Part shown: one piece after another, positions 1 through 18,600 of the stretch
How positions within the stretch are numbered: the first letter of the stretch is position 1
Layout of the letters: each line of letters starts with the position of its first letter
NCBI GenBank assembly: GCA_950097015.1
Contig: CATNEN010000033.1
Coordinates: forward strand, 3,596,001 to 3,660,000
Direction of reading: 5' to 3'
Length of the DNA: 64,000 bases
Origin: Macrostomum hystrix
Taxonomy: Eukaryota > Animalia > Platyhelminthes
Notes under the pieces: generated by a model
The model's database searches: none
The model's input: only the letters and a program-made list of their open reading frames with translations
Told to the model about the DNA's origin: nothing
Translations under genes and position numbers: made by a program

Positions 1-792
1 ACGTTTAATAGGTCGATTAAACGTCTTCAATCCGCACGGTCGTGTCTTTGAAACAGTTTGCTCCGCGTACACCAGAACCTCCTCGGAACCTTCAGTCGTC
101 AGTTGGATTTGTTTGTTGTATTCCAGTTCGTGTAGGTCACGGCCACCTCGAAGTCCAAAGACCTTTCCGACAAGAAAGATTACTGTGACAAGAAGACTTT
201 TTGGTGAATTGTCACCCAGCACTCCACGATTCCAAAGAGAATCCTCGTCCGCAGCAGCAATCGGCGAGGCACTCTTACACCCGTTGAGATTGCCTTCCTT
301 AGCAGTCTCCCGCATAGCGGCATCAAGTGCACGTCGGGTTGCGACAAACTCCGCATCCGTCCAAATTGACATAGTGTAGACGTAGTAGTGTATGCTGGAT
401 CATCGTAATCAGATCCTTAAGAGTTCCCGGGGGAACATCTCGCCATTTTCCTTGCGCACCTCAAAGACGAAAAATTGAAGAAGATGATTTAAATCACTCT
501 TAGTCAGCTCCTCAATAGGCTTTAACAACATCAAGCCGGTAACTTCTCCTTCAAGTTGCAGTTGATTGCAATTTTCCTTCCAAGTTCTGAACACTTTAAT
601 TGCCCACTTTTCCTTCGCGTGGGTAGAGTTCGGCAGACTCTCAGCCAGCCTGCGCTTCAAATCGGTCGAATCAAGCAGCTCACCAACACGGCTTGTCGAA
701 GATAACGATGGACGCATCGCATCAGCAGCAGGTGGATTATCAGATGAATTGAAGAATTCAGAGAAGTCGAAGTCTTCCATAGCGCCAGCCAT
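1..792 (-). mobile_element. Crypton-type tyrosine recombinase (DUF3504-like) pseudogene #1, frameshifted, runs off the window edge
   Basis: ORF 409..792 gives LPNSTHAKEKWAIKVFRTW...LNHLLQFFVFEVRKENGEMFP. After frameshifts, my translation of 1-360 gives LWNRGVLGDNSPKSLLVTVIFLVGKVFGLRGGRDLHEL...SKTRPCGLK, including the first catalytic Arg motif (FGLRG). Confidence 0.85.
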
Positions 793-1596
793 TGCAAAAT
801 GTATTGCCCAAGTACTTGATATAGCACTTAAACAATTTCTTCTCTTAATCGCTCATCTTCTTTTTAGTCTTTCTATGCTGACTGTCTTTTATTCTTAATA
901 TTAATTTTTTCTATGGCCCGAAAGGATGCTATATGGATGTGCGATATTCAAAACTGTATTGGAAAACTACAAATGAAAGTTTGTCTATGGTTAGAATGTG
1001 GAGGCTTCGCCCCACACCCGCTAGCAGCCGCTGTCGAATAGATGGAATACTCTCCAAAATAGGTAATCTGATTTCATATAAAATAATAGCCTTTTAATAA
1101 GCTGTCTAACCACAGAATGCTTATTAAATGGCTATTATCATATACATAAAGCATGATTTTTTAGTCTATAATGCTCGCAATGTATAACTTTGATGCTTTT
1201 TTCGGGCTTTTTATTTACTGCTTTATGTCTGTGGTCGGGAAATAATGTCCGCAAATGTTTATTTCAGTAGAAATTTAACGATTGAACGATTTAACAGCGC
1301 ATTTAATATCAATAGTAAATTATTAGTATACCTTTTTGCGATCTTGTTGGCCAAAACTGCGATAAATTTGGCCAGCCTGGGATAGACAAAAAAGCACAGA
1401 TTGTACCCTTTTGTCTATGGTTTCCGGCATTCATACTTGCGGTAACAATTTAATTGTTTGTCGGCTTTTTTTGATTGTTGCCGGATTTCAGACGAATGTA
1501 TTTGGCTATCAAAACAAGGAACAACAATAGCAACACGGCGAAAGTGTTTCATAGTCACAAAAAGTTCTTAAGAACAAACCGATCGAATCAATTGTT

Positions 1597-3013
1597 TTAC
1601 TTTCCGTAAAAGTTGAATGTGCAGTTGTGGAACTGACCACCACAGAGGCTTCTCGGCAGGTCTTGGCCGCCCTCGGGTGCTTTCATCAGCTCGCCTCTAT
1701 CAGACCCAGTTGTCACACTTTCGATGGTGGATTCCGCATCGTCGTCAATCTTGGTGACTTTGGACCCATAGGCAGCCAGACAAGCGCTCATTCGGGCCAC
1801 ACAGTCCATGTCTCGCCGCTTGTATACATCCACTGAGCTCGAATTCTTGTGTCCCGTCATTAGTGTAATCGCTTGATTATCGAAACCGGCCTTGGCCAAA
1901 CAGTTCACCTAAGTTTCAGCAGTTGGGTAAGACAGTATTCTTACAGTTTTACTGAAGTGAGTAGGCCATGCGATCTTTACTCACCGTGGTTACTCGCACA
2001 CAATGGTTGGTGTACTTCCGCTGCAGAGCCAGACACGCACTCAGATTCTTCATGAAGTCTCCAAGTGAATCTTTGCCGAGTCGTTGGCAGGCTGAGAAGC
2101 CAGACTTATTGAGCCTTGGGAACAACACCTCACATCCATTCGGTAGTTGAGAGACGTACATTTTAAAGGCTTCGACGGGACAAACAGCTTTGTCTTGCAC
2201 GCTGTACATCCGAGCTAACTTGAGATCCTTGAATGCCTTCTCGTTCAACGACGCTTTAACGTTTTTCGACAGCATGGCGACAGCGACGCGTACAAACTCC
2301 GTACCTCCTTCTGACACTATCTCAAAACATCCAGGTGTCAACTCTCTCAGATTTTCTCGGCCTCGCAGTGCGAAATGGAGCAGAACGTTGAAAATGTTTT
2401 CGTCCTGCAGTTTACGAAGGGACGTTCGGTCAAAGTATGCGCGAATTGTTTGCATGTCGTCCTCGGAAATAGCTTCGTATTTGTCTACCTTCTCGACGTG
2501 TCCTTCCATGTACATTTTCACCATGGCGACAAGAACGCCATTGCAACGCTTGAAGGCTTCTCCGGTAACGATGTTCACCTGGCGATTAACGGACGGGGAT
2601 TGCAGGTGGCGTTGAATAGCCGCACGAAAACAGATGAGAGACTTTGGCGCATAGTAAGTTCCATCCTGCTTTCGAAGGGATGAATAGAAAAGCCTCAGAT
2701 AATCGTTCAAAAATCGATCCGGAACACGCTCAAACTCCTGGCAGAGCCCCTTCTCGTTGAGGAACTGTCGGAACCTTGCCACGTGAAGCTTCCGTTGCGT
2801 CTCGGTCGATTTCGGCACTGAGTCACTCTCAAGTCGGTCCAACATTTCCAGATCTTCGCTACGTAGCTCAGGCAGCCCGTTGGAACTGGACGACGCATCC
2901 AGGTTGTCCATCTCCAGAACGTAGCGCGTGCTCGACTCTCGGGTGACAAAAGCCAACTCGTCCGTGGAGAGTCCACATATTTCTCCGCCAGGAATGTTTG
3001 CGTAGCGAATCAT
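1597..3013 (-). CDS. Intact Crypton-type tyrosine recombinase #2, join(1985..3013,1597..1908), 446 aa
   Basis: Removing a 76-nt phase-0 GTGAGT...TTAG intron (1984-1909) joins ORFs 1949..3034 and 1597..1908 into one frame. Catalytic set is complete: ALRGRE, SKN, HCVR, TGH, DVY. ATG at 3013. Confidence 0.88.
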
Positions 3014-3778
3014 AGCTACTTTTCCTATTTGCACTCCGAATAGGAGAATTAAATAAAGCTCAAAATCAACTTGAGAATTAACTCATGGCAGCCAGGCTAG
3101 CTGTCTTCACTGTCCTTTAAATTTGCCATAAACGATTAATTATCTCTACAACCCTTTCATTTAGAGAGCGACTAAATTTGCTCTCCGGCAACATTCCGGC
3201 AACAATCGCATTTCATACTCAGCATCCGCACTATGTCTGGGCCATAGACAAGGGAAGTCAAAAGGGTACAATAATGACATATACCGATTTTTTCGGCAGC
3301 AATTGCTCTACTAAGCTTCAGCCGCTACGCGGCTTCAGCTTACGCAATTGCTGCCGAAAAAAATCGGTATATATCGTTACATTGGCCCAGATTTCACCAT
3401 AGAATCTGCCGCAAACTGCAATCAAATTGGCACAAACTGCGATCAAATTGGCCAGCAGTTAACTTAGCAATCAGTTGCATTGTCATTAACTTTTGCGGGC
3501 ACACGTGTCCCTTTTCGGGGTATCAATGAATGAAATTTCGTCTCGAATTTTCCGTAGTCTATGTTAAAACAGCAGTCCAACCAAGGAGTTCTATAATTAG
3601 TAATTTTATAGAACGATCCTTGATTTTAACATGCAAGTGCAAGTGTATTGTCGTTTTAGAACATAGATAGCAGCATAATGGAAAGATAATGATAACAGTG
3701 CAATAACAATGACGGTAACAATGAAGCGCAATATCAGTTTTGCAAATTCAGTTTGCAACAGTGTTTACTTTCGACGCA

Positions 3779-4953
3779 TTACTGCTTACCATCACCAGCT
3801 AGTTTGAACGTGCAATTCTTGAAAGTCCCATTGAAGTTCACGACGATAGTTGGCACAGCCTCGGTAGACCGCTGCTCTCCAAGCTTGGTTTCCGCAGACA
3901 TAGTCTCGGTAATCGCAACTTCGCCATCCTGGCCAATGCGACGAATACAGACCTGGGAGGAGCTTGTCTCGACGCTCAGTGCTGATGGCATCGCACGGAA
4001 GTCGGCATCGCGCCTCCCTACGCTCTGCGGATTCTTGTGGCCAGTGTTAGATGCGATAGCCGAGTTTGAGAAGCCTCTCTCCTTCAGTACCGTCACGTGT
4101 GTAACTCTAATGCAGTGGTTGGTATAACGCTTAGAGAGGGCAAGTTTAGAAGACAAAGTACTCAATTGAATTTTTGCCTAAATTTCGCGCAGCACAGTAC
4201 CAGCGTTTGTCGGCCAGGCCCTTAGAAAAATTCATACACGGCTTCGGAAAGAGACTTTCGATCCGCAGTTCGTCCAACCGCTGCAGATACAAGCGCATAG
4301 CTGACACAGGACAGTTCGCCGAGCCCTCGGTGGCATACATGCGCACCTTCTTGGCATTCTCGAACTCGCTCGGTTACAACGAAGCCTTGGCATTCTTGCT
4401 GATGATGTCATGACTCAGGGTGAAATACTCTTTGCCTTCCGAGTCCTCTTGAAAGTCGAAGCTTGTCTTAGATAGTAAAGGCAGCGTCTCTCGCCCACGT
4501 AGTCCAAAGTAGTAGATTAGATGGAACTTCACCTCCTGTTGCAGTACTTCGCCGTTTGTCCGATCAAAGTAGTCCATGATTTTGACAAGATCGTTCTTCT
4601 CGATCACTGCGAACTCGTCTCCAGCCTTTGGTTGATTTGCACGCTTGTATTTTTGCACTATGGACACAAGCATCCGATTGGCAGCAGTGAACACAGGGTC
4701 TCCGATAATGTTTACACCTGGACGATTAAGGTTGAAGTACCGATTCAATCCACGTTCCTTCACGTTCAATCTCTCTCAGTTCCTCGAGCGCATCTTCATC
4801 GAGGTCCAGGATTTCTTCCTCATCTAGCCTTCGAGCAAACTCGCCACTTAGTTCCTCCAGATAACGAGTTGCAGATTCCGAAGTCACCCAGTTCAGCTCT
4901 TCAGTTGATAATGCGCTGACCAGTTGATCGGGTAGATTCGCTAAGTTTAACAT
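3779..4953 (-). pseudogene. Crypton-type tyrosine recombinase #3, paralog of #2, with frameshifts, a stop and an internal deletion
   Basis: ORF pieces 4726..4953, 4374..4769 (YYFGLRGRE...SKNAKASL), 4146..4346 (CPVSAMRLY) and 3779..4165 (YTNHCIRVT...TGHKNPQSV) are collinear with #2. The catalytic Tyr position is lost. Confidence 0.88.
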
Positions 4954-5456
4954 TTTAACACTCCTGTATTAAAGATCTGTTGTCCCTCTCCTTCTTATTT
5001 AACGAAGTTCTCTCGCTCCTCACTCTCCTTATAGTCTATGGCGCTTATACCCATCAACCGATTGGAAACAAACTTAGACCATAGACATTCCAACATCTCT
5101 AATATAGGGCCCGCTAATTTCTGCATTGTCGCCCGGAATTTTCTTGCTCAAGTTACTGACAATATGATTAACATAGAATTTTGCTAGTAGTCAATGTAGA
5201 ATTTTGAGGGCGCGCAAGCGCAAACTACAAAATTCTATGTTAATGTAACATTTTACTGAAGGATATTCATTAAGTAAACAGTGCAAGAAACGATAAATAT
5301 GCCTACCGACTACATATTGAACCCAATTCACGCTGATAAGCAGACTTAACCAATATAAATTTTTGCAAGCACAAAAAATGAGAACAAACATCAAAGGCGG
5401 CTGTAAGCGGGTGTCACTGGCAGCACTGAAGAACTTGTCTGCAGCATACATGTCCG

Positions 5457-6524
5457 TCAAGCAAGGATGTCATCCCGCTGTAAGCATCGTTGAAAGTATG
5501 TCTGGTTGTGGTTGCACCACTGAATGCACTTGTGCTGGGTGATGACATCCATGGACGCCTCGACTTAGCGCTTAAGGACAGCCATTCGATGCTGGTCCAT
5601 CGTTACACCCGCAGCTTGTGCCAGGTGTCTGTCCGCGACCTCACGCTGTATGGCAGGTGTCTGCACTCTCTGCTTCACTGCTGCCTTCAGAGCGGATCCT
5701 GCTCGTTCAGCCGGATTGATGAATGGCGAATATGGCGGCAGGAACCAGAAGTCGTGTCCATCTGACATTGTGGGGGCATTGAGGTGAGCCCGAGCTCCGT
5801 CAAAGAGGATCACGAAATCGCCTCCCACCAGCTGGTCAACTTCGGACAGAAATGCGCAGAATTGTTCATTGCGGACGCCTCCCTCCACCAGAGCAAAGTG
5901 AACCAGGCCAATCTCCTGAGAAATCGCCACGCAAATGCTGAGAGATTTCTTCCGCGTTGTCCATTTACAATGGCAACCGCCCGTTCACCCCGTGCAGCTC
6001 GGCCTTGAGTGCGACAAGTGAGGTCCACAAGTTCACTCCAACTCGTCCATGTACAGCAGATGCTTCTGGCTCCCGTCCTCCAACAGCCACTCAACGTGCA
6101 TCCTTCGAGCCTCCTTCGTGACCTCTTCATTTCAATTCTGCGGCACCTGCCTGACCAGCTTGAGGGTGATTAGGCGGCCATCAAGTGCGCGGCTTCTGGT
6201 CGTGAGGTCCACATTTGGAGCATTTGAAAACTCTAGGATGAGATGGCTCTTCATCTGCTGCAGAGTCACTGTCCGATTGCCACCAATGTATGCGCAAATG
6301 CTGTCAAGCATGGCGTCGGTCAACGACTTGCGCTTGTCACCTCCTCGAGGCAGAGGTTCAGTACGACCAGTGGCTGCGAACGTTCCTACGATGTTTCTTA
6401 CTGTTTTTCTAGCGATGCCCATCAGCCGACCCAGATGCTGCCAGTCATCCCCATTCTCAAATGCTTGAATCAACCGATGGCGATCCTGTGTGGAAACTTT
6501 TCTGTATGGACCTCTCTTGGCCAT
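5457..6524 (-). pseudogene. IS630/Tc1-like DDE transposase pseudogene A
   Basis: N-terminal HTH region (RKTVRNIVGTF...LPRGG), then YMDE, VILFDGARAH and FLPPYSPFINPAE motifs, interrupted by stops and frameshifts. Confidence 0.9.
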
Positions 6525-6823
6525 GTCGAAACTCTTCCTTTGGCACTGACATACAGACCTGGGCCATATTGATCGCAGTTTAGGCCAACTTGGTCGCAGC
6601 TAGACAACTTTGTCTATGAAGAAACCTTATTTATGCTGAGCAAAACTTGGGAGAGAGATTTTCGTCTCTACGCTTTTCATGTGGGCCAAATTGATCGCAG
6701 TTTTGGCCAACTACTTCTGCATTCAGGAACTACTTCAGGAATAGATCGCAAAAAGGTATTTAATATTAATAGTAAATATCAATTGTCTTGTCAAATAGTA
6801 ATGTAAATTATCATATATCAATA

Positions 6824-7075
6824 TCAATTGTTGATGACGACGCTACAGTTGTTGAAGTTGAAGTTCGCAGTAGATCCACGGCTTACTGTCTCCCGAACCA
6901 TTTTAGCGTCAACAATGGCTGAACATGATTCCAGTTGAACGTCATATGTGCGCATATACTGTCGCACTCCCACTGTGCTGCGATGACCGGTGCGCTCCAT
7001 GATGAGTTGTTCATCTACTCCAGCGTTGAAAACAGACGTGTGGCGCATGTCGCCTTCAGGCTGTGATTATAGCAT
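6824..7075 (-). mobile_element. Crypton tyrosine recombinase #4, C-terminal fragment
   Basis: With one frameshift: YNHSLKATCATRLF-NAGVDEQLIMERTGHRSTVGVRQYMRT...FNFNNCSVVIN, the HxxR-like/TGH/Y end of DUF3504-type recombinases. Confidence 0.85.
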
Positions 7076-7389
7076 TTTGCGGTCTAGATGGGACAGCGGG
7101 CTTTTAAATTGGACACAGAGTTGTCTGCTGCTCCAAGCCGCGACTGCTGCCTATGGCCTACTCTAAAAGACACACACGGGCTTTTAAATTAGACAGCGGG
7201 CACACATTTAGACACTAAGGCGTAGGTTATAGTCATGTATTTCAGTACAATTCGTTGATACGCTCGGAATAAAATGAAGTAAATTTTTCGTGCATTCTCA
7301 AGAAGTTCACGCCAACAGAAACGTCTTTACAAATCATGAAGCAACCTAACACAACGATTATTTAGAGTTTTGTTTACAGTCATCCACTC

Positions 7390-8400
7390 ATCCTGATATG
7401 TTCACATTGGCCAGGCACTGAGGGATGAGGAGGCCAGGCACCAGGCACTTAGCGCAGGGTGTGCTGATACCACCTCACACATTTCTGCTGGGTGATGCTA
7501 TCGATGGCTTCAACACCGCACCGCTGCAGCACCATGAGTCTCCAGTCCTTGGCGGTGAAGTCAACAGGTACCATGGCGAACTCTTGCTGCACGCCTGGCT
7601 GGCTCATCTGGCGTTTTAAAAGTGCTGTGTGCTAGCTCCACCGGGTTAAGAAATGGTAAATACGGAGGAAAAACTCGAATGCTAATGCGACCCTAGTACC
7701 CCTGCGGAATTTGCAGGCCTTGGTGAAACCGGGCACCGTCAAGCAGAATCACACTGGAGTGACCATCCTGCAGCTGAGCAACAATCCTTGGGCAGATGCG
7801 TTGCACGAACATTTGTACGCGCTCGAGGTTCACATTTCCGATCTCCAGGCTGTAATCCACCAGGCCAGTTGATGGCGACGTAGCCAGAATGAGGTTGACA
7901 GATGTGCTCTTCTGGGTGTGAACGTTCATTCGAACTCGTGTTCCACGAACACTTCTGCCGAAGCCGCGTCGAGTCCAGACTCCGTAGCCGGATTCATCGA
8001 GGTGCACCAGGTCGACGAATGGTGGTAGGTTTACCAACCATTGAGCGAAATCCTGCCTCTTTGCTTTGTTCTCTTCTGTGTTTCGTGCCTCGGGAACGTC
8101 ACCTTCCCTCGAAGGACAGATCATGGTGAAAAGATGTCCATCCAATGATCGTGATATTGTTGAAAGGTCGACACTCTCCAGGGTACCATGAAACCCAGCC
8201 AGCAGGGCAGTGCGCAGCTGCTGCAACGTGAGAAACGGGTTGTCCTCCACCGCAGCTAGCAGAAAGTCATTCATAAGGCTCGGTGAGCTTTCGATTCTTG
8301 GTTCCACCCCTGGGCAGTGCATGGCGTCTCCCTTCCAAATGAAAGGCGTGGCAGATGTTGTACACGGAGGTTCGCTTGATGTCCAGCATTCGAGAAATTT
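7390..8400 (-). mobile_element. IS630/Tc1-like transposase pseudogene B, same clade as A, 5' end truncated by the P remnant
   Basis: HLDESG, VILLDGARFH and VFPPYLPFLNPVE motifs. The C-terminal ITQQKCVRW matches ITQHKCIQW of copy A. Confidence 0.88.
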
Positions 8401-8403
8401 CGC

Positions 8404-10083
8404 TCACTGGCTCACCTCTTTGCCAGGCTTGAATAAGCTTTTTTCTCGAGTTATTTTAGCGTACGCAGGATTCTCCATTCTGAGTCTCTTGATTACGAAC
8501 AGTAAAATGGTGTCAACATGTTTGCGCAGCCATGTTTGAAGTGCATCAGCAGAGGGCTTCGTGAGTCCCGTGAACATTTGTGGAAGCTGCTTCTCTCTGA
8601 AAAAAGCGCCAGACTCGTCTTTCGTCAGTAGTGCCGTTCGGCAGGTGCTGCATACCAGGACGCCACTTTTAAGAATCAAGTAACCTGCTATGTACTCGAC
8701 AATTTCAATCGTAACATCTCCCAGATCAATTTCTGCCATCTCGTCAGTCTCTGGTGCCTCAGCATGAGAATCACGAATCGCTCATGCCGTTGTAGACGGT
8801 GCAGCACCCATCGTCCATCGCCACAAGAGCCGGTGTGTTGCTGGCAACCAGTGTAGGACGAACAGCAGCAACACCGCCATCATCTTCGCAGTTTGTATTT
8901 GATGAGCCTGAATAAGCTAAGCCGCTCGATGCAACAGATCGCAAGGCACCGACAAAGGCAGACAATTCAGGCCTATTATTGAATCAATTTCGACCTCGCA
9001 TAATGCAGAACAAATTCTGAAAGCAGTTGAAAGGAATAGTGCATATTTACTCTTAATTGGCCAGTTTCAAAGAAGACGCCGAGTCGTCTTACCTCAACAT
9101 GGTCCTGGGTAAAGCGCCGAAGATAAACAAACTAAAATCCGTCCGTAGAAATGAGATGCTTTGAAAGGCTGGCCAAGGAGGCAATTGAAACGGACCACAC
9201 GGTCTGGAATTTTATTCTTAATTTGACTGGTCCCCCAGAAATCGGATGAAAGCACCAGCTGCTAATGAATTCGCGCACCTGATCGAGCATCTCGATTTGC
9301 TCATCCGCAGTATCTCAGAAGATTGGCCGGTAGAATCCTTTTGCCATTGCATCCGTAGAATTGAGCAGATCGAATGAGTCGTTCAGTTTCTCAACAAAGT
9401 CAGCCGCCTGCAAACTCTCTTCACTCATCTTGCCATGATGGACTAGCGTTCTGATTCCGGCTGCAACGGAATGGCTGAAAATCTGAGCAGCAAGACTCAC
9501 CTTCATTTTTTCCTAACCTCAAGGTGAAATGCAGTTCACCTAATTTCTTGGCTAGTCTAAGCTCTCTTCCGCATTCATCGTGGTAGAACTTCACCAGATG
9601 CTCCCATTTAGCCAGCTCGCCCTTATCAAACTCTATAGTGTTATTTTAATGAGCTTTTCTGGCATTCTTTAAACAGTGAGGCAAGTCTATCACGATGAAC
9701 ACAGGATCCTTAGTGACGGGATGAGAAATGAACGGCTTGGATGGTGTAACCAGCTTTGACAGAAACGCCCATTGTGTGGTCTCTTGATCAGCCACAAGAG
9801 CTGCTACACGAATTCCAGCTTTATGGCTGGCCACCAGACACTCTTGGATGGCATCATTGAAGCCCTGCTGACCAAGAGTTGAGCGCACTGGGTAGTAGGC
9901 TATCGGTTGCTTCCAATTTGTTGCGACTCCGCGCAAAACAGCCACGACAGCCTCGTCCACTGGTTTATGTTCACCTGTGACTTTGGAGCTGACAAGTCCA
10001 CTGACAACGTATTGGTGCTGATCACAGCGGATGGATCGAGCGAGGCTCATGCCGTCAAAGCATAGGATGGCGATCCTTTCCAT
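8404..10083 (-). mobile_element. P-element/THAP9-family transposase remnant, 5'-truncated and degraded
   Basis: LCFDGMSL, WKQPIAYY, VADQ, DLPHCLKNAR, KMKVSLAAQIFSHSVA, NDSFDLLNS, NCEDD and YIAGY...CSTC motifs appear in the expected order across ORFs 9646..10083, 9315..9506, 8771..8965 and 8404..8739. Confidence 0.92.
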
Positions 10084-10319
10084 CTGTTTTCGCTAGGCCC
10101 CCACAGCCCCGCAAGGGGGCAAGCACCCCCTTGATCCCGCCATGTGGGGGCTCCACACATGCCCCCCCAGCTAACCACCCCTGACCCCTGACCAAATCGT
10201 TTATTCCACAAAAATTCGCTAAAATCGCAAAAAATAAATTTGTTGTTGGCCCGTTTAAAGTTAGGGATACATATCATATTCCTCACTCATATAGTTTTAT
10301 ATAGATAAAAAACCTCGGT

Positions 10320-10830
10320 ATTGACGTCGGACACAGTAACACGAGACTGTTGTATGATACTAACCGCAGAAGCCTCGGTGGCGTCTCCACTCAAAATAGC
10401 ACTTTGGATCTTCTGTCTTGTTGTTGATGGCGCTATGTATTTCTCCAGAGCCTTGGTAGTAGCGTGACCGGTGATCCGAGCAATGTCTCCGCGTTCGACA
10501 CCAGCCTCGTGGAGTTAAGTAGCACATGCTTTTCGCAGGCTCTGATTTGAGAAACGAGCAGTGCTGTTTGGCCGAACTTCAGACACTGCGGCCGTGTCAT
10601 GCTTCTTATTTCTTACCTCAAGGATGAAAAGCTTCAGCAAATAGTTCAAATCGGACCTAGTAAATTCGTCCATAGATTTTAATACCATCAGAGAGGAGCC
10701 GCCATTCTTTGCACAGTCTGCTTTTTCATTTGAGCCACTCTTTAAACGTCGATATCATCCACGAACTCTTCTTGACTGTATTTGGTGGTACTGTTGCTCT
10801 TCGGCGCATCGGCTTCTGCATCCGACAAGA
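10320..10830 (-). mobile_element. Crypton tyrosine recombinase #5, internally deleted derivative
   Basis: My translation: VPPNTVKKSSWMISTFKEW...MDEFTRSDLNYLLKLFILEVR joined almost directly to FSNQSLRKACAT*LHEAGVERGDIARITGHATTKALEKY. Not in the ORF track. Confidence 0.8.
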
Positions 10831-11163
10831 TTTGATGTCGAGCACCAGACTGTCCAGGCATATTTCTTGGCTTATTTGTCGATAAAATCAGCACGTCTCT
10901 CGGTTGTATAAGTGTCCCGGCTTGCTGTGTTGCTGCAAAAATAACTTTACTTCGTCGTACAGTAATTTCTTTCTAGATTAGCTTTCAGCTTTGTGCCATA
11001 GACAAAAAACTTAATTTATACTTTTCATTTTTAATACATCGGGAATCGGGAATCGGCGAATCGGGCTTCGGCGAATCGGGAGTAAACCGTATCCCCCGTA
11101 ATTGTAACGGGCAAACTAGCAAAAAGTAAAGGGAAACTAAAGTACTAAAGAACTAGAAAAAAT

Positions 11164-11662
11164 GGTTTACTCCCGATTCGCCGAATCCCGATTCGCCGAT
11201 TCCCGATTCGCCGATTCCCGATTCGCCGAATCCTGATTCAATACATCTTACTTTATCATAAATTAAAATTAAACCACATAACCATTGCCCTCTTTGAGTG
11301 TTGGTCAAACATTGGAACTCTATTTTTAATGTATTGAAATTAATTAAAAAACTAACTTAAATGAAATGCACTTTCTTCATTCATTAACTTGTAAAATTGC
11401 TTCTAAACTTTATTAACTTTCTGGAACGTAGATTGAGTGAGAAAAGAAGAACATCACACGTACTTCGGAAAAAGCAAAACTTGCTGGACATCCTTGTAGA
11501 GCCGAAAGTAAAAGTGTAATGAGTTACGGTAGCTCAGCAAAAAATGTTCTTAGCAATTTTTTCGCAAAAAGGGAATTCGGCGAATCGGGAATCGGCGAAT
11601 CAGGAATTCGGCGAATCGGGAATTTCGGCGAATCGGGAATTTCGGTGAATCGGGAGTAAACC
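11164..11662. mobile_element. MITE-like element with TIRs and subterminal tandem repeats, plus an orphan end at 11041-11088
   Basis: GGTTTACTCCCGATTCGCCGAA at 11164 is the inverse of 11641-11662 (21/22). Internal CCGATTCG/CGGCGAATCGGG arrays; no ORF; superfamily unassigned. Confidence 0.7.
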
Positions 11663-12089
11663 GGGGGATACATCGGCTTAGCCTTAGTCAATAAACGAGA
11701 CACCTCGAGCCTTTGCCCGCTAGACAACAAAATAAGTGGGAAATATTATGCATTTATTATTAACAGTAATATAGGCTGCGGGCCACAAGGGAAACAACAG
11801 GTCAATGGCAAAAACGAATGCAAACGAAAAACAAAATTTATCGAGTCTCAAAAAAGTTAGAGATTGATAGACAGCCTTAAGCCTTCTTTCTCCAAAACAA
11901 TTAATACCCCTCGTTTTTGGGCAGAAATGTGAGGCCGAGGGCACCGTTAGGTCACACATTGGGTCCATCCTTCTTGTCAAAGCCCCATGAGTCACGCTGC
12001 TTTCTCACTCATGGGGCTTCTCTTTAACTTTTTATGAAAGTCTATGGTTACATTTGGGGCCCCCACACCCCCAGCGGGGCGGGCGATTT

Positions 12090-12344
12090 GCTCATCTCAT
12101 CATCTCCTTGAGCACCATCAGTCCAGATTGCTCGCCAGACGCCCACTGTCTTTTTTTCGTTGTGCCATTCCATGAACGTGACGACCATCCAAGTAGCTTT
12201 CTTCTTAGTAGCTTCTGGCACACAGCCATCGACAACAGCCATGAGCTCTTCCTCCGACGTAAAATCGAAGCGAGGGCAGTTATAGATAGACGACATAAGC
12301 AACCGTTTTGTCACTTCTGTCACATTAAAAAGTGGCAGCCACAT
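12090..12344 (-). mobile_element. Crypton tyrosine recombinase #6, N-terminal fragment
   Basis: RFDFTSEEELMAVVDGCVPEATKKKATWMVVTFMEW is homologous to the N-terminal core of #1 and #5. Confidence 0.75.
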
Positions 12345-12432
12345 TGTCGCTAAACACTTGCAGAGCCAAACAGACTTTCACTTTTTCAAGTTAGATAGGA
12401 AAGATGCTCCGCTTGTAATATAGGGTAACACT

Positions 12433-13622
12433 TTGTGCGCTCACTGTGAGTGAGCAGTTAGGCCTATAGCCCAGTAATTTAACAGATCTACGAGTACAGT
12501 AAACATCTGTAAGTTTTCCCACAAACATTTGGTCACGAAAAATTGCTCCAGAGGCGCATTATTGAGCATAGAATTGTACGTTTGCTTTTCTGCCAAGCTT
12601 TACCATACTCCGCTGCCTTAGACAATCTTTTGCTTGAAAAAATGACGGAGCATAGACTCTGAGACGGTGTGTGGTCAAATACCAGTTTATTTTTAAAAAA
12701 TAGCATAAAGCAAATATGTAACCCTAAGAAGGATAAAAAACGTACAGTCAGTATAACATTATGGTTTTCATGAACTTTTATTTATGCCTCAAATGATACC
12801 AATCATTTTCAATGCACTCACGGAGCCGACCAACGAAGCCATCGACGGCATTGCGGACTGCATCCATCCCGTTCTGCCGAATCCAATCAAAAGCTCAAAC
12901 AATGGCTGCGTTCAGATGATGTAAATTCAAAAAGCCTCCCTGGGCGTAGACCAGCTCACGAGCAAAGCCACAAAGAAAGTAGTCGACCGGATTCAAATCA
13001 GGTGACCTTGCTGGCCAAGGTGTGATAAAACACTTGCTAATCACTCTATCGGCACCGAAAGCGTCACTAAGAAACTGGCGCTTCCCCCTCCAACTCTCTC
13101 ATCACATCAAAATCGCGCTCTTCTGTCCTGCCACTGCGAGGTCTGCCACTGTTTCCTTTATGTGACAACTGTAAGTTCTTTCTTTCAGAAACTTTTGCAC
13201 CAGTTGATGAACATTCTTCGTTTAAAGAGGAATGGCAGCAGCGTTTCGTTGAGCATTTCGCCAAGTGTTCGCGAAGCAGATGTGACGCTCCCTCCATTTC
13301 GGTAATAGCAGTGGATGATTCGAAGACGAGTTTCTTCTTCAAACTTGCAGGCCATTGACGGTTTTCGAACTATGCAGCAGCTATGGTCCATGGGAAATTT
13401 TAACATTATAGCAGTCTCAGAGTCTAGGCATGCTCTGCCATTTTTCTTACGCAAAAGGTTTTCTATGGCCGCCGTCTATGGAAAAGCTTAGCAGAGAAGC
13501 TAGCGTACACTTCTATGCTCAATAATGCGCCTCTGGAGCAATTTTTCGTGACCAAATGTTTACTGTAGACCTTTTAAATTACAGAGCTATAGGCTAACTG
13601 CTCATTCACAGTGAGCGCACTG
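12433..13622 (-). mobile_element. Internally deleted Tc1/mariner element (rosa/DD41D-like) with about 120-145-bp TIRs
   Basis: 12435-12580 is the inverse of 13504-13620. Remnant transposase CYYRNGGSVTSASR...GRPRSGRTEE is fused to PWPARSPDLNPVDYFLCG; most of the catalytic domain is missing. Confidence 0.8.
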
Positions 13623-14000
13623 ATTTCCTCCCTCAACTGGCACGATGTGGCAAATTAAGGAGTCACCTGTGATTATACGCTTCTCAGGCAGCCACTCAAT
13701 CAGCTGTACCACTTAGCGATCCCCGAAGATCGTGCCCATCCGCTTCTTCATCGATGGCACCGTCTTGGCCTTCAGCAGAGTGGGTTCATCAGGGCGCTTC
13801 CACTGTATGCTCTGGGCTTTGGTCTCCGGCTCGTAGAGGGAAATCATGGACTCGTCCCTTGTTACGATGGCATCAAGAAACTCCTCTTTGCGGTACTCAT
13901 GATGTGCAGCAGCTGTTGGCAAGCCCTGTTGCGCTGCATCTCTGCAGTCAGGAGTTTTGGCACCCATCTAATCGCATGAGTTGCTGTTTTCGCTCATTGC
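13623..14000 (-). mobile_element. mariner transposase fragment, cut off by the adjacent element
   Basis: FLDAIVTRDESMISLYEPETKAQSIQWK...KAKTVPSMKKRMGTIF, then LIEWLPEK. Confidence 0.85.
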
Positions 14001-14029
14001 TCGACAGAGTATCTGGTATCTGACGATAC

Positions 14030-14290
14030 CAGAGTATCCGACGCATTGCTTTCACTCTGTCTGCGTCCACTTTAATTCCAATTTGAGAAAGTATGTTGCC
14101 GAGAAATTTTATCTCCTTCAGTCCGACTTTCAGTTTTTTTAGGATTTAAGCGAAAATTCTTCGCACAGCAGCTTCATCGTGTTCTGTAGCAGTCTTGCCC
14201 CAGAAAATAAAGTCGTCAATAAAATTGTTGCAGTTACTGATCCTGTCTGAGATCTCCTCTCGAACCCGGAAGCAGAAGACAGAAGACAGA
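14030..14290 (-). mobile_element. Ty3/gypsy-type reverse transcriptase fragment
   Basis: My translation with one frameshift: NNFIDDFIFWGKTATEHDEA...LNPKKLKVGLKEIKFLGNILSQIGIKVDADRVKAM, a YxDD-type motif plus the downstream KFLG motif. Confidence 0.75.
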
Positions 14291-14586
14291 TATTTTTCCA
14301 AAGTCTGATAATTCTAGCAATGTAAATTCAAGCGTTTTATTATATTGTATATCGCGGTTTGTAGTAAATAATGTATACTGCACATGTCACGCAAAACAAA
14401 CAAAGTCAAACTAAGAATTGTTAGGCTTTGATCCAGAAGGCCATGCAACAAGTGTACAACAAAGAAACTACAAGCTATAAGGATAGCATACAGACAAGGA
14501 ACAATGCAGGCAATCAATGTTAAATATAATAACATAATACTACTTCAGTATACATGCCGATGCAGGAAATTCTATGAATGAAAGTT

Positions 14587-14950
14587 TCAGACCCGACAAG
14601 CACTGCGCAGTTTCACCAAATTACGGTCACGCTCATCACTTGCTTGCTCCGTCGTTTTGCAGCGCTGGACGAGTCCTTTGAAGAAGATGTTGGAAAGGCG
14701 GTGCGCTACAGAAGAGGTGGAAAATTCTTCACCTGGGAAAAAGCAGTCAGCGATCTTGTCAGGAACAGCTGCTGAACTCGAGACGCGAAGCTTGGCGAAT
14801 GCGAAATGAAACTGGCATAGCATGCAGAGACGCAAAAAGTAAAATAGCCAGTCTGGCGAATGCGCTAGCTTGCCCCGAGAGACCATCTCTGTAAATTCGC
14901 ATGCTTTAATGTCTCCAAATCCGGCATCAGTGTTCGTAGGCAGTCCTTCC
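14587..14950 (-). mobile_element. Possible C-terminal remnant of a second P-like or other DNA transposase
   Basis: FTEMVSRGKLAHSPDWLF...RLSNIFFKGLV...LVKLRS resembles transposase C-termini from memory only; needs an HMM search. Confidence 0.3.
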
Positions 14951-15502
14951 TTGGCGGCAATATAACTTTAAAACTGTAAAATAAAACTGTAAAAACGTGT
15001 TTCAAATCGATCGAATTAAGTGTTTCGGTTAAAACTGGTTGCTGAAGGTTGTAAAGGATTCAGATTTGAAATTTTTTGCTCACGTCTCGAAAAAAACTCA
15101 ACTCCCACGAGTAAAATTCTGGTCAGCAGAAAACTTTGAAAATCGGACTCAAAAACTTTTCAGCATAAAATGGCCGTTTCCCGTCCCGAGTATTCAGTAG
15201 TCCCTGCTCTTTTATTTAGTCATGGCAGTCTAGTCCACATATATAAAATAAAGCTCAAAAAGAGAAATATCATCTATCATAACAATAAAAGATGCGTCGC
15301 TCTCGAGCTCAAAGGGCTTGTTAAGGTCGTGTGTTGCCAACATGGAGTTATTCGTTAGCGTGATTTTATAGTGTAAATTAAACAATTTTCTGATATCTCA
15401 TTATTGCAGTCTTTAATGCCCAAATGATTTTTATTTATTTTTCTTCTGTTTCTATATTCATAGCTCTCTTATATATTTAAAAAATTGTTTATCTGTCCGC
15501 TT

Positions 15503-15609: not shown

Positions 15610-18600
15610 ATGAAATCGTCACGCCCAGAGCAGTGTATATGCGAAATCTGTAATTGTGGGTAAGTAAATATTTATAGGAAGTGATTTTTATGAATGAATT
15701 ATCACGATATTTACGTGAATGCTCTATACAACATATGAATTCATGTCATGTCATTGAAAAAGAAAAAATAAAGAACCCAATTCATGACTTTTATTTCCAT
15801 TGCCTATTTTATGATTTGCAATAATATTCAATTTAAACTGCCTAAACGGTTGACCCATCAAACCGATCAATTAGCTAGCTGAAAAAAGCAAACATAAAAC
15901 ATAATTCATAAATGTCATCTAGCAATATAAATGTAAGTTTTTTAGACTAGCAACCTTTGTTGTGACTTTCTTAGGTTATACAGCAAGATTTTGTTTTGCA
16001 TTTTAGCAACTAAATTTAATTTCTTAAATCCCAAAGAGTCCATATTAATTTAGCCCACACAATGTACATGTATGATGTATTGTTAAAGAAAAGGTAGGTA
16101 GACCAATAATAATTTTATTCAACTCATTTGATTGACTGCTATTAATATTTTATTATTATATAATATTATATTATAATATTAAAATATAATAATATTATAT
16201 TTTATTATAACTGTTTTAGCAGCCTTTAAATATGTGAGAGTAGAAATATAATATTGTCCAATATTATAGTATATTATATTATAGTATATATTATATTATA
16301 GTATATCTTACATTTTTATAGACTACCTAAAATTCAACTTGGAAAGCGTATGCAAGTAATTCAAGTATAGATTCGTATTTTTTAACATTTTAAATCTTAA
16401 CATATCTATGTAATCTAAATCTAATGCAGTTTACCATTATAGTCATGTTTGTTAAAAAAAACGTGTAAAGTGCTTTTGAAGTTCTCGGTTCTGTTTAAAA
16501 ATAATTGCAAATGAGCGACCTCTTGTTTAGAACTGACCAATCTTCTAAGCGAGAGTTTTATTCAAAAGTATAACCCTGAACCCTGCAATACAGCCGGCAC
16601 CGATGCAAGGTTCATCCGAATCGGCCGTTGCGCGATGGTCCGTGCAACCTGTCCGAGTACAACAACAAATACATCCAACATCCCATGCAGCCTGTGTCTA
16701 GCTTCAAGCCGGCGGCCCGTCCAGCCGCTGGCGATGGCCCGCTGTCGGACCAGACCACTCACCGGGTGGACTACATTCCCCACCCACTGGAACGCCCGCA
16801 CCTGCACCAGCCGGATCAGTACAGGCAGCCGGAGGGTGCTTTCGAGGACACCACCATGTACAAGAAGGACTACACGCAGAAGCAGGGCGGCCCAGCCCAG
16901 CCTATTAAGCGGGACGTGAAGAGAGGCGCGCTTGGCGAGTTCCAGGTAGGCAGCAGTCTAAAGAATTTAAGTTTAATAATAATAATAATACTTTATTACA
17001 CCTGCCAGCTATTCTGTGGTGCATCTGAATGCTGTGTACGTCTTTACAGTCCATGGACTGTGGGGACGCCATACGCACCCTCAATTACCGCAGCTAATGC
17101 TGGCATCCATATCTCAAACAGCTGATTGAGCTGAAACAGAGTTAAATGACACGAAAGGAAACAAATTGTTCCAGCGTAGTAGGGAGTCGAACCCCCGACC
17201 TTCAAGTCATGAGTCCCAACCTCTAACCACTAAGCTACAACCCCACATATTTCTAATAAGTACTTGCATTATTACATACTTTTTTCTCGTTTTCCTCCCA
17301 GGGTGAGCCGACGTACAAGCACGACTACAGGCGCTGGGAGCTGGCCAAGCCGGACCGTGGTGGTCCCCAGAACACCTGGGAGCCGCCGCGCGATCCCTTC
17401 GGCGGCGTCCCGACCTACCAGACCGACTACGTGCCCTACGCTGTCCGGCCCACGGCCAGCTTCAAGCCGAACGAGGCGGCCAAGCTGTCCCAGGCGCCGC
17501 TGGAGGACATGACCGACTATCGGCAGTCCTATGTGCCGCATCCGTTGGAGCGCCGCCAGGAGAAGGAGCGAGCCGGTTGGAATCGGCCGGCTGTGCCATT
17601 CGACGGTATGAGCACTTTCACGCGCGACTACACGCCAAAGGGTGCCGCCCTGCGCGCCTCAATGAAGCCGGACGCTCGACCCTACGCGTCAAATGCGCCG
17701 TTCCACGATGACACCACCCACCGCGTGGACTACAAGCCCTGGGAGCTGTCCCGGCCGTTCGTTCATCAGGCCGGCGCGTACGTACCGCCCGAGGGTGCGA
17801 TCGACGACACGACCACCTACGTGAAGGACTACCCGGTGCATCCGCTGGTCAGGCAGACTTACGCCAAGCGGCCGGACCGCGGACAGCCCAGCGGTCCGTT
17901 CGAGGACGCCACCGACTATAAGTGAGCCTTCCTTGACTCAATTCAGAAACCAAATTTACCTCGCCGGTTAGAGACAGATAATCTGAAATGCGAGAGCCGG
18001 CCGGATTGAATGTGAAGAGACGAGACAACAAAGAATAAATGGTCAAGCGAGAGGAATAGATAAAAAGAGATGAGAGCGACAAGATCAGAGTATGAGAGAG
18101 AAACATACGAGACAGTGGAGAGATGAGACAGTGGAGAGTTGAGACAGTGGAGAGATTAGACAGTGGAGAGATGAGACAGTGGAGAGATGAGACAGGAGAG
18201 ATGAGACAGTGGAGAGATGAGACAGTGGAGAGATGAGACAGGGGGGGAGACGAGATAGTGGAGAGATGAGACAGTGGAGAGATGAGACAGGGGGGGAGAC
18301 GAGATAGTGGAGAGATGAGACAGTGGAGAGATGAGACAGTGGAGAGATGAGACAGGGGGAGACGAGATAGTGGAGAGATGAGACAGTGGAGAGATGAGAC
18401 AGGGGGGGAGACGAGATAGTGGAGAGATGAGACAGTGGAGAGATGAGACAGTGGAGAGATGAGACAGGGGGAGACGAGATAGTGGAGAGATGAGACAGTG
18501 GAGAGATGAGACAGTGGAGAGATAATACATTCGACGTACGAGAGACGAGTGCCAAAGTGCCAATAATTGATCATCTACGATCTGAACAATTGTTCGTAAT

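What the first reader, a model, noticed from the sequence alone, without database searches (positions are those of the whole stretch)
1..15000. All transposon coding remnants in the 15-kb nest lie on one strand: candidate uni-strand piRNA-cluster-like trap
Seen: 12 confidently identified remnants (six Cryptons, two IS630/Tc1, P, rosa-like, mariner, gypsy RT) plus one tentative are all on the minus strand, mostly fragmented and truncating one another. With independent random orientation, 12/12 has probability about 2x0.5^12, roughly 5e-4. Known: uni-strand piRNA clusters such as Drosophila flamenco hold TE fragments antisense to one long precursor. Inference: a plus-strand precursor here would yield antisense piRNAs, unusually from mostly DNA transposons and Cryptons.
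Basis: partly seen in the sequence, partly recalled or inferred. Interest (0 to 1): 0.78.

Follow-up and report, generated by a model that had tools for sequence, protein, structure and literature searches.

The report
Strand-coherent transposon nest upstream of a gene
Twelve jumping-gene copies of four unrelated kinds sit in a row on the same DNA strand over about 22 kb, which is non-random and recurs elsewhere in this animal genome, but whether the nest makes defensive small RNAs (piRNAs) cannot be tested from sequence.

Summary
The core observation holds and extends beyond the stated interval. From 8.8 kb upstream of the window to window position 13475, twelve well-supported transposon coding remnants all lie on the minus strand: seven Cryptons, three IS630/Tc1, one mariner and one P. 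No plus-strand remnant was found among them.

Several elements are intact and young rather than fragmented. The run ends upstream at a plus-strand mariner (-11.7 kb). It ends downstream about 400 bp before the start codon of a plus-strand SAXO gene.

PIWI-clade genes are present. A pair test on 457 elements elsewhere in the genome shows that neighbours within 10 kb share a strand 32:13 (p=0.007). For pairs of different superfamilies the ratio is 17:3. This nest is therefore one example of a genome-wide habit, which other first readers of this scan also flagged at five more loci.

Orientation-specific Crypton targeting is not supported for the one family tested: its target is only 4 bp (ATTG), and that motif is symmetric in the nest. 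The piRNA-cluster reading remains the leading but untested explanation (about 0.35). The locus is far smaller than flamenco-like clusters and differs from them in composition.

The parts
1..852 (-). Crypton W1, an old tyrosine-recombinase transposon. Its C-terminal part continues upstream of the window to -536.
   Evidence: QRICH1 domain. tblastn to U3, E=2.6e-43. HMM E=1e-87. Only about 71% nt identity to other copies.
1326..6713 (-). IS630/Tc1-a element, interrupted by Cryptons W2 and W3.
   Evidence: DDE_3 at 5565-5930 and HTH at 6132-6524. An internally deleted copy at C25:6608768-6609403 joins pieces 1326-1403, 3383-3483, 5249-5531 and 6534-6713.
1400..3384 (-). Crypton W2. It is complete, has an intact 377-aa frame and is bounded by a 4-bp ATTG direct repeat.
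   Evidence: 99-100% identical copies on C35, C1 and C25. Junctions of 7 copies.
3478..5256 (-). Crypton W3, with a frameshifted ORF.
   Evidence: 91-95% nt identity to C24:5511180-5513209. tblastn E=1.7e-180.
6827..7066 (-). Weak C-terminal fragment of a Crypton.
   Evidence: Crypton HMM E=0.0019.
7066..8540 (-). IS630/Tc1-b element with terminal inverted repeats.
   Evidence: DDE_3 at 7693-8322. 94-96% nt copies and inverted ends.
9318..10286 (-). Old remnant of a P-element-like transposase.
   Evidence: TNP-like_RNaseH_N E=2.5e-18. TNP-like_GBD E=2.3e-13. No close DNA copies.
10290..10754 (-). Crypton W4 remnant.
   Evidence: HMM E=2.9e-7. tblastn to U3 E=2e-11. Weak QRICH1. 94-97% nt copies.
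11164..11663 (.). High-copy MITE with inverted ends. It has no coding strand.
   Evidence: Dozens of copies at about 91-93% identity and inverted termini.
12422..13620 (-). IS630/Tc1-c, an internally deleted copy with inverted ends of about 200-270 bp. Coding remnants lie at 12781-13475.
   Evidence: tblastn to DDE_3-bearing ORFs of the C24 and C7 copies, E=1e-55 and 1e-25. Inverted repeats.
13716..13967 (-). Weak mariner-like fragment.
   Evidence: Transposase_1 E=0.039, below the Pfam cut-off.
14292..15210 (.). Non-autonomous element with inverted ends. Its orientation cannot be defined.
   Evidence: 88% nt copy on C9 inserted inside a Tc1. No long ORF..
15611..15660 (+). First coding exon of the SAXO1-2 gene: ATG, a Cys-rich N-terminus, then a gtaagt donor.
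   Evidence: Read directly from the sequence.
16592..17922 (+). SAXO1-2 exons 2 and 3 (16592-17122 and 17260-17922).
   Evidence: PF05217 E=3.8e-11 and 8e-24.

Best explanation
The interval from about -9 kb to +13.5 kb is an accretion nest. At least twelve independent insertions from four transposition mechanisms landed there over a long period: tyrosine-recombinase Cryptons, IS630/Tc1, mariner and P. All were retained with their coding strand on the minus strand.

The most likely cause is a directional constraint tied to plus-strand transcription through the nest. The best-precedented form of that is a small uni-strand piRNA source locus. There, antisense insertions yield transposon-complementary piRNAs, while sense insertions are lost because they add nothing or truncate the precursor.

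Shown: the strand coherence, the independence of the insertions, PIWI genes in the genome, and a genome-wide tendency of neighbouring transposons to share a strand.

Inferred: any plus-strand transcript, any piRNA, and selection as the cause.
For: 1. There are 12 of 12 solid remnants on the minus strand and none on the plus strand within the run.

2. The insertions are independent. Each element's closest relatives lie at different, unrelated loci. Ages range from 100% identity (W2) and 96-98% (U2, mariner) down to about 71% or no DNA match (W1, P).

3. PIWI-clade genes are present. The best solved-structure match is sponge Piwi-A, E=3e-102, against E of about 5e-15 for Argonautes.

4. Among 457 Crypton, mariner and Tc1 hits outside the nest, adjacent pairs within 10 kb are 32 same strand to 13 opposite (p=0.0066). 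Heterotypic pairs are 17:3 (p=0.0026). At 10-20 kb the ratio falls to 8:6. Because unrelated mechanisms co-orient, a regional cause is favoured over an enzymatic one.

5. Other loci I held show the same pattern and include retroelement genes. On C9, an RT, a Crypton and a Tc1 are all minus. On C7, five Crypton remnants, a Tc1 and a DUF7041 ORF are minus, against one plus-strand Tc1-c.

6. The nest abuts a satellite block of at least 27 kb. This resembles the heterochromatin-border setting of known clusters.
Against: - No small-RNA or RNA data were available.
- The run is about 22 kb, against hundreds of kb for flamenco-like clusters, and no LTR or gypsy content was detected (PMC10643416).
- Across the run (-9 to +10.8 kb) the plus strand carries 7 AATAAA and 7 ATTAAA signals, against 9 and 14 on the minus strand. 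There is no depletion.
- The putative precursor would run into the SAXO promoter and ATG exon within about 400 bp of the end of the nest.
- A plus-strand mariner sits at the upstream edge.
- Co-orientation across the genome is detectable only at 10 kb or less, which is shorter than typical clusters.
- Several members are intact, probably active copies rather than dead fragments.
Confidence: 0.35

Rival explanations
1. Orientation is set at integration. Some local polarity, such as the direction of transcription or of replication-fork movement, or an asymmetric target, biases how incoming elements (Cryptons above all) are oriented. Nests then become strand-coherent without any selection or small-RNA function.
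For: Co-orientation is a genome-wide property and not special to this locus. It is already present for the youngest insertions: W2 at 100% and U2 at 98%. Cryptons integrate by site-specific recombination at a short asymmetric core (PMC9977147, PMC3212892).
Against: W2's target is only ATTG. The flanks of 7 copies are unrelated. ATTG and its complement CAAT are equally frequent on the nest's plus strand, 111 against 108. Crypton-Crypton pairs are the least biased class (11:7), while pairs of unrelated mechanisms are the most biased (17:3). No orientation-biased integration is known for Tc1/mariner or P, as far as I know.
Confidence: 0.2
2. The nest lies inside an ordinary host transcription unit on the plus strand, either an unannotated 5'UTR intron of SAXO or a long non-coding RNA. 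The well-known purging of sense-oriented transposons from introns produces the antisense bias.
For: A plus-strand gene starts about 400 bp downstream of the nest. A pyrimidine-rich stretch ending in 'ttttag' lies 17 nt before the ATG. It could be a splice acceptor, which would imply an upstream non-coding exon. Another reader noted an antisense Crypton in an intron elsewhere in this genome.
Against: The ATG-bearing exon lies downstream of the whole nest. A TATA-like stretch at about 15240 allows a nearby start site. No host exon was found between -23 kb and the nest. A same-strand rate of about 0.72 implies that roughly 80% or more of insertions are antisense. From general knowledge, that is stronger than reported intronic bias for DNA transposons. 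On C24 the transposons share the strand of the adjacent LicD-domain ORF.
Confidence: 0.2
3. Chance plus ascertainment. With thousands of windows read, a run of about 12 co-oriented remnants will be found somewhere and has no cause.
For: There are at least 3,900 coding TE candidates in the genome. That gives about one run of 12 or more by chance if spacing is ignored. The scan produced 3,900+ notes on this genome.
Against: The independent neighbour test that excludes this nest rejects random orientation (32:13, p=0.0066; heterotypic 17:3). The run here is compact, 22 kb. Other readers flagged similar nests at five more loci (those notes are unchecked).
Confidence: 0.15
4. Head-to-tail accretion. 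Each Crypton integrates at the recombination site regenerated at the end of a resident Crypton, building a tandem, same-strand chain. The DDE elements are bystanders.
For: There are seven Cryptons in a row, all minus. Other all-same-strand Crypton chains lie on C7 and C34.
Against: The Cryptons do not abut each other. W2 and W3 sit inside a Tc1, and a mariner separates U1 from U2. Genome-wide, Crypton-Crypton pairs are only 11:7. The model does not explain five co-oriented DDE elements. Copies of W2 elsewhere are not next to Crypton ends in 6 of 7 cases.
Confidence: 0.1

Closest known systems
Uni-strand piRNA clusters of the flamenco type (Drosophila flam and flam-like loci; PMC10643416, PMC11400887)
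   Same: Transposon remnants from many families are packed together and nearly all lie on one strand. Old fragments are mixed with recent insertions. The nest sits next to satellite DNA. The host has PIWI-clade proteins.
   Different: This locus is about 22 kb, against 227-1085 kb. It is built of Cryptons and DDE DNA transposons and has no detectable gypsy or LTR content. In flam-like loci the strand bias is driven exclusively by gypsy elements. No promoter, transcript or piRNA evidence exists here. The nest ends at a gene's promoter. Many similar small nests seem to exist in this genome, rather than one or two master loci.
Antisense bias of transposons within introns of host genes
   Same: All elements are antisense to the nearest plus-strand gene (SAXO). 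The coherence has the length scale of a transcription unit, 10 kb or less.
   Different: The nest lies upstream of the ATG-bearing exon and not between coding exons. The bias is far stronger than usually reported for DNA transposons.
Crypton transposons (Goodwin et al. 2003; Kojima & Jurka 2011, PMC3212892; active CryptonF-1_cRei, PMC9977147)
   Same: The members encode only a tyrosine recombinase (QRICH1, DUF3504 and Phage_integrase matches). They lack TIRs and LTRs. W2 is bounded by a 4-bp direct repeat (ATTG), as the recombination model predicts.
   Different: Chains of diverged Cryptons held on one strand together with DDE transposons are not described in the two Crypton papers I read.

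Membership tests
Uni-strand (flamenco-like) piRNA cluster | Abundant 24-32-nt, 1U-biased small RNAs mapping to one strand only. | not testable with these tools
   No small-RNA data can be reached.
Uni-strand (flamenco-like) piRNA cluster | Strong strand bias of transposon fragments across the locus. | tested here: met
   12 of 12 solid remnants are on the minus strand from -8835 to 13475. The direction of transcription is unknown, so 'antisense' is assumed.
Uni-strand (flamenco-like) piRNA cluster | A discrete promoter and a long Pol II transcript spanning the locus. | not testable with these tools
   No RNA-seq or ATAC data. The promoter tool on hand is for bacteria. Plus-strand AATAAA is not depleted, which is uninformative.
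Uni-strand (flamenco-like) piRNA cluster | Size of hundreds of kb with gypsy/LTR enrichment (criteria of PMC10643416). | tested here: not met
   The run is about 22 kb and the nest at most about 29 kb (CpG and composition boundary at -14 kb). No RT, LTR or gypsy match with Pfam or with a local RT query.
Uni-strand (flamenco-like) piRNA cluster | The host has a PIWI-clade Argonaute. | tested here: met
   Piwi-domain loci. The exons on C30 and C33 match Piwi structures at E=3e-102 and 6e-36, far better than AGO. Named homologues are piwi-like proteins.
Crypton (tyrosine-recombinase DNA transposon) | Encodes a tyrosine recombinase as its only enzyme, has no TIR or LTR, has short terminal direct repeats and occurs in multiple copies. 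| tested here: met
   QRICH1, DUF3504 and Phage_integrase hits. W2 runs ATTG...ATTG, and 7 copies have unrelated flanks. There are 550-670 candidates in the genome.
   Tested for W2 only. The core is 4 bp and the flanks are unrelated. ATTG and CAAT occur 111 and 108 times on the nest's plus strand. Other families were not tested.
Intronic antisense transposon bias | The nest lies between exons of a gene on the opposite strand. | tested here: inconclusive
   The SAXO ATG exon at 15611 lies downstream of the nest. No upstream exon was found. An untranslated 5' exon cannot be excluded.

The most novel reading that the evidence does not exclude
This under-sampled animal lineage keeps many short (10-60 kb) strand-coherent nests built mainly of Cryptons and DDE DNA transposons. 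They act as a dispersed set of uni-strand piRNA source loci. This nest has captured currently active Crypton and mariner families in antisense. That would be a mode of cluster organisation and a target spectrum unlike the few large gypsy-directed clusters of flies.

Alternatively, a host-imposed polarity orients integration of unrelated transposon classes.
Probability: 0.2. Interest if true: 0.7.

Novelty: new member of a known kind. Interest (0 to 1): 0.42.

Why it matters
If the nest and its look-alikes are piRNA sources, several things follow. Strand coherence alone could map the piRNA clusters of a poorly studied animal from its assembly. Cryptons, whose control is essentially unstudied, would be shown to be policed by the piRNA pathway. 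The locus would also be a dated series of captures of families that are still active.

If instead the polarity is set at integration, it would reveal an unknown directional cue shared by tyrosine-recombinase and DDE transposons.

If it is only intronic purging or chance, the locus is an ordinary transposon pile-up.

Tried and rejected
ANNOTATION THAT FOUND NOTHING
- Pfam on 35 plus-strand frames in and next to the nest gave no transposon hits. So the strand bias does not come from looking at one strand only.
- Pfam on minus frames in 10.3-15 kb gave almost nothing. The gypsy RT could not be found, also not with a local RT query.
- The elements at 11164-11663 and 14292-15210 are non-coding inverted-repeat elements, so they have no orientation.

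EXPLANATIONS REJECTED
- Segmental duplication of the nest: each piece matches different loci.
- A paralogous nest on C24: only two families are shared.
- A motif-driven orientation for W2.
- Split hits or Tc1/mariner cross-hits inflating same-strand pairs: I checked query ranges by eye. One duplicated region (C10/C41) was removed, and the test stayed significant (31:12).

UNINFORMATIVE TESTS
- Adding reverse transcriptases to the neighbour test: the 150 scored hits were dispersed intact copies. By eye I found only 5 pairs, 3 same and 2 opposite.
- CpG observed/expected is about 0.8-1.1 across the nest, so there is no methylation footprint.
- PolyA-signal counts.

NOT ACHIEVED
- Organism identity. 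The best named PIWI homologues are only about 42% identical (corals, limpet, amphioxus). An unnamed 85% hit comes from a sequencing-run assembly.
- Further fetching and searching of this genome.

Full report
CONTEXT

The window is G000:C33:3596001-3660000 in a 220-Mb, 42-contig eukaryotic assembly. I fetched the 50 kb upstream as L001-L005. Coordinates below are window coordinates, and negative values lie upstream. From at least -50 kb to about -23 kb there is a purine-rich satellite.

Downstream of the nest the window holds ordinary genes among many minisatellites:
- A plus-strand SAXO1-2 gene. Its ATG exon is at 15611-15660 and ends in a gtaagt donor. Exons 2 and 3 are at 16592-17122 and 17260-17922.
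- A plus-strand inositol-monophosphatase exon at about 38.8-39.3 kb.
- A minus-strand two-pore potassium-channel exon at about 56.3-56.8 kb.

The nest is therefore intergenic. It lies between a satellite block and the 5' end of a plus-strand gene.

CHECKING THE OBSERVATION

Pfam scans of open frames on both strands gave these minus-strand matches in 1-15 kb:
- Crypton recombinase: QRICH1 and Phage_integrase.
- IS630/Tc1: DDE_3 and HTH.
- P-type transposase: TNP-like RNaseH_N and GBD.

Thirty-five plus-strand frames in and next to the nest gave no transposon match. To gain sensitivity I also ran tblastn with Crypton, Tc1, mariner and P frames taken from the nest and from other loci of the genome. 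A Crypton HMM built from 15 diverse copies was searched against every stop-free segment of the 114 kb. All hits within the run are on the minus strand.

DNA searches against the genome resolved the anatomy:
- IS630/Tc1-a (1326-6713) was hit twice, by Crypton W2 (1400-3384) and Crypton W3 (3478-5256). An internally deleted Tc1-a copy at C25:6608768-6609403 joins the four separated pieces.
- IS630/Tc1-b is at 7066-8540.
- The P remnant is at 9318-10286.
- Crypton W4 is at 10290-10754.
- A high-copy MITE is at 11164-11663.
- IS630/Tc1-c (12422-13620) has inverted ends of about 200-270 bp. Its minus-strand remnant at 12781-13475 is 87% identical in protein to a DDE_3-bearing ORF of a C24 copy.
- A non-coding inverted-repeat element is at 14292-15210.
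- Weak minus-strand signals are a Crypton fragment at 6827-7066 (E=0.002) and a mariner fragment at 13716-13967 (E=0.039).

I could not reproduce a gypsy RT, a sixth Crypton or the 'rosa-like' label.

EXTENDING THE COUNT UPSTREAM

The same polarity continues upstream, all on the minus strand:
- Crypton W1 (-536..852).
- Crypton U3 (-3151..-2204; DUF3504).
- Crypton U2 (-5567..-4314; intact 418-aa frame).
- A mariner (-6695..-5757; HTH_48 and Transposase_1; intact 313-aa frame).
- Crypton U1 (-8835..-7012).

The solid run is thus twelve elements over about 22.3 kb. The next coding remnant upstream is a degenerate mariner-like transposase at -11698..-10754 on the plus strand. The evidence is tblastn E=1.6e-26 with 7 stops, and HTH_29/HTH_48. 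Between -23 and -12 kb I found no transposon or host domain. A change in CpG observed/expected at -14 kb suggests that the nest starts there.

INDEPENDENCE AND AGE

Each element's closest relatives lie at different loci:
- W2 has 99-100% identical copies on C35, C1 and C25.
- U2 has 98% protein copies on C1.
- The mariner has 96-98% copies on eight contigs.
- U1 has a 96% copy on C1.
- W3 has a 95% copy on C24.
- Tc1-b has 94-96% copies.
- W1 has only about 71% matches, and the P remnant has none.

The run is therefore a series of separate insertions spread over time and not a duplication. Several members are intact and probably active, so 'mostly fragmented' is overstated.

IS THE ORIENTATION FORCED BY CRYPTON TARGETING?

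Seven W2 copies share exact ends: ATTG at the left, then the element, then ATTG at the right. Their flanks are unrelated. This fits the short-core recombination model of Cryptons (PMC3212892, PMC9977147), but it leaves only 4 bp of target. ATTG and its complement are equally common on the nest's plus strand, 111 against 108. For W2, then, the target does not dictate the strand. The other Crypton families were not tested.

IS THIS LOCUS SPECIAL?

I pooled the genome-wide hits of three Crypton queries, one mariner query and one Tc1 query. That gave 457 elements after merging split hits. I then scored adjacent pairs, excluding this nest.

| Pair class | Same strand | Opposite | p (two-sided) |
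|---|---|---|---|
| All pairs within 10 kb | 32 | 13 | 0.0066 |
| Same, one duplicated region removed | 31 | 12 | 0.0054 |
| Different superfamilies | 17 | 3 | 0.0026 |
| Crypton-Crypton | 11 | 7 | 0.48 |
| All pairs at 10-20 kb | 8 | 6 | 0.79 |

Heterotypic pairs come from separate searches, so candidate selection cannot couple them.

Loci that I held as sequence agree with this:
- C7:4966-4977 kb has five Crypton remnants, a Tc1 and a DUF7041 ORF on one strand, with one Tc1-c on the other.
- C9 has a reverse transcriptase, a Crypton and a Tc1 all on one strand.
- One W2 copy on C25 sits beside a W1-like Crypton and a mariner, all co-oriented.
- C24 is mostly one-stranded, with two weak opposite fragments.

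Notes by other first readers report five further nests in this genome with near-complete polarity, and one case of Cryptons in alternating orientation. Those notes are unchecked. The scan has therefore found this pattern before, on other DNA of this genome.

The consequence is twofold. The co-orientation is real and not a look-elsewhere artefact, but this nest is one instance of a genome-wide habit. At a same-strand rate of 0.72, eleven consecutive same-strand steps have a probability of about 0.03.

WHAT IT MOST LIKELY IS

Unrelated mechanisms co-orient: tyrosine recombinase, DDE, P and, elsewhere, RT. The effect fades beyond about 10 kb. A regional directional constraint therefore fits better than an enzyme-specific one.

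The genome encodes PIWI-clade proteins. Piwi-domain exons on C30 and C33 match sponge, insect and mammalian Piwi structures at E=3e-102 and 6e-36, far better than Argonautes. Named homologues are piwi-like proteins at about 42% identity.

A small uni-strand piRNA source locus is therefore the leading reading. I put it at about 0.35, for these reasons:
- Nothing about transcription or small RNAs is shown.
- The locus is far smaller than flamenco-like clusters and differs from them in composition. Those are 227-1085 kb and their bias is driven by gypsy (PMC10643416).
- The plus strand is not depleted of polyadenylation signals.
- The hypothetical precursor would run into the SAXO promoter.

The rivals are integration-time polarity (0.2), an unannotated host transcript or 5'UTR intron with ordinary purging of sense insertions (0.2), chance (0.15) and head-to-tail Crypton accretion (0.1).

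The intron rival is weakened because the ATG exon lies downstream of the nest. A pyrimidine tract ending in AG lies 17 nt before the ATG, so an upstream untranslated exon remains possible.

VERDICT

In kind, it is a candidate new member of the known class of strand-biased transposon clusters. Its unusual features are its composition (Cryptons and DDE transposons) and its small size.

Noticed in passing
window 1400-3384; copies in L007, L008, L009: Crypton W2 is complete, with an intact 377-aa recombinase frame. It has 99-100% identical copies on at least four contigs and exact ATTG...ATTG ends. It is probably an active element with a 4-bp target.
   Followed up: partly
L001-L003 (C33:3546001 to about 3573000): A purine-rich satellite of at least 27 kb (unit like GAGATGGATAGAGGCT). 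All three minus-strand frames are open and none on the plus strand. CpG observed/expected is about 0.3.
   Followed up: partly
window 15611-17922: A SAXO1-2 (axonemal microtubule stabiliser) gene starts about 400 bp after the nest. A possible splice acceptor lies 17 nt before its ATG.
   Followed up: partly
window 18109-64000: The rest of the window is unusually rich in distinct minisatellites with periods of 10-194 bp. About 25 arrays lie between and inside genes.
   Followed up: no
G000:C30:1319151 and 2064508; C33:511872 and 958646: PIWI-clade genes occur as pairs in inverted orientation on the same contig, 450-750 kb apart. Argonaute-like loci are also paired across contigs (C10/C2 and C28/C39).
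   Followed up: no
G000:C10:82-116 kb and C41:549-590 kb: Two transposon nests with the same series of Crypton, Tc1 and mariner hits in mirror order. This is a large inverted duplicate or an uncollapsed haplotype.
   Followed up: no
G000:C32:855980-866174: A palindromic Crypton arrangement: fragment(-), copy(+) ... copy(-), fragment(+). This suggests an inverted duplication or a recombinase-mediated rearrangement.
   Followed up: no
G000:C38:33133164, 33139326, 33145488: Three identical reverse-transcriptase hits spaced exactly 6162 bp apart. This is a tandem array of a retroelement.
   Followed up: no
L009 (C25:672257-676339): A second W2 copy lies directly beside a W1-like Crypton fragment (79% aa) and a mariner, all on one strand. 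This echoes the W2-W1 neighbourhood of the window.
   Followed up: partly
L029:3483-4622 (C24:5513483-5514622): An intact 380-aa frame with a LicD-family match (E=7e-13) lies just after a Crypton on the same strand. It may be a host gene or transposon cargo.
   Followed up: no
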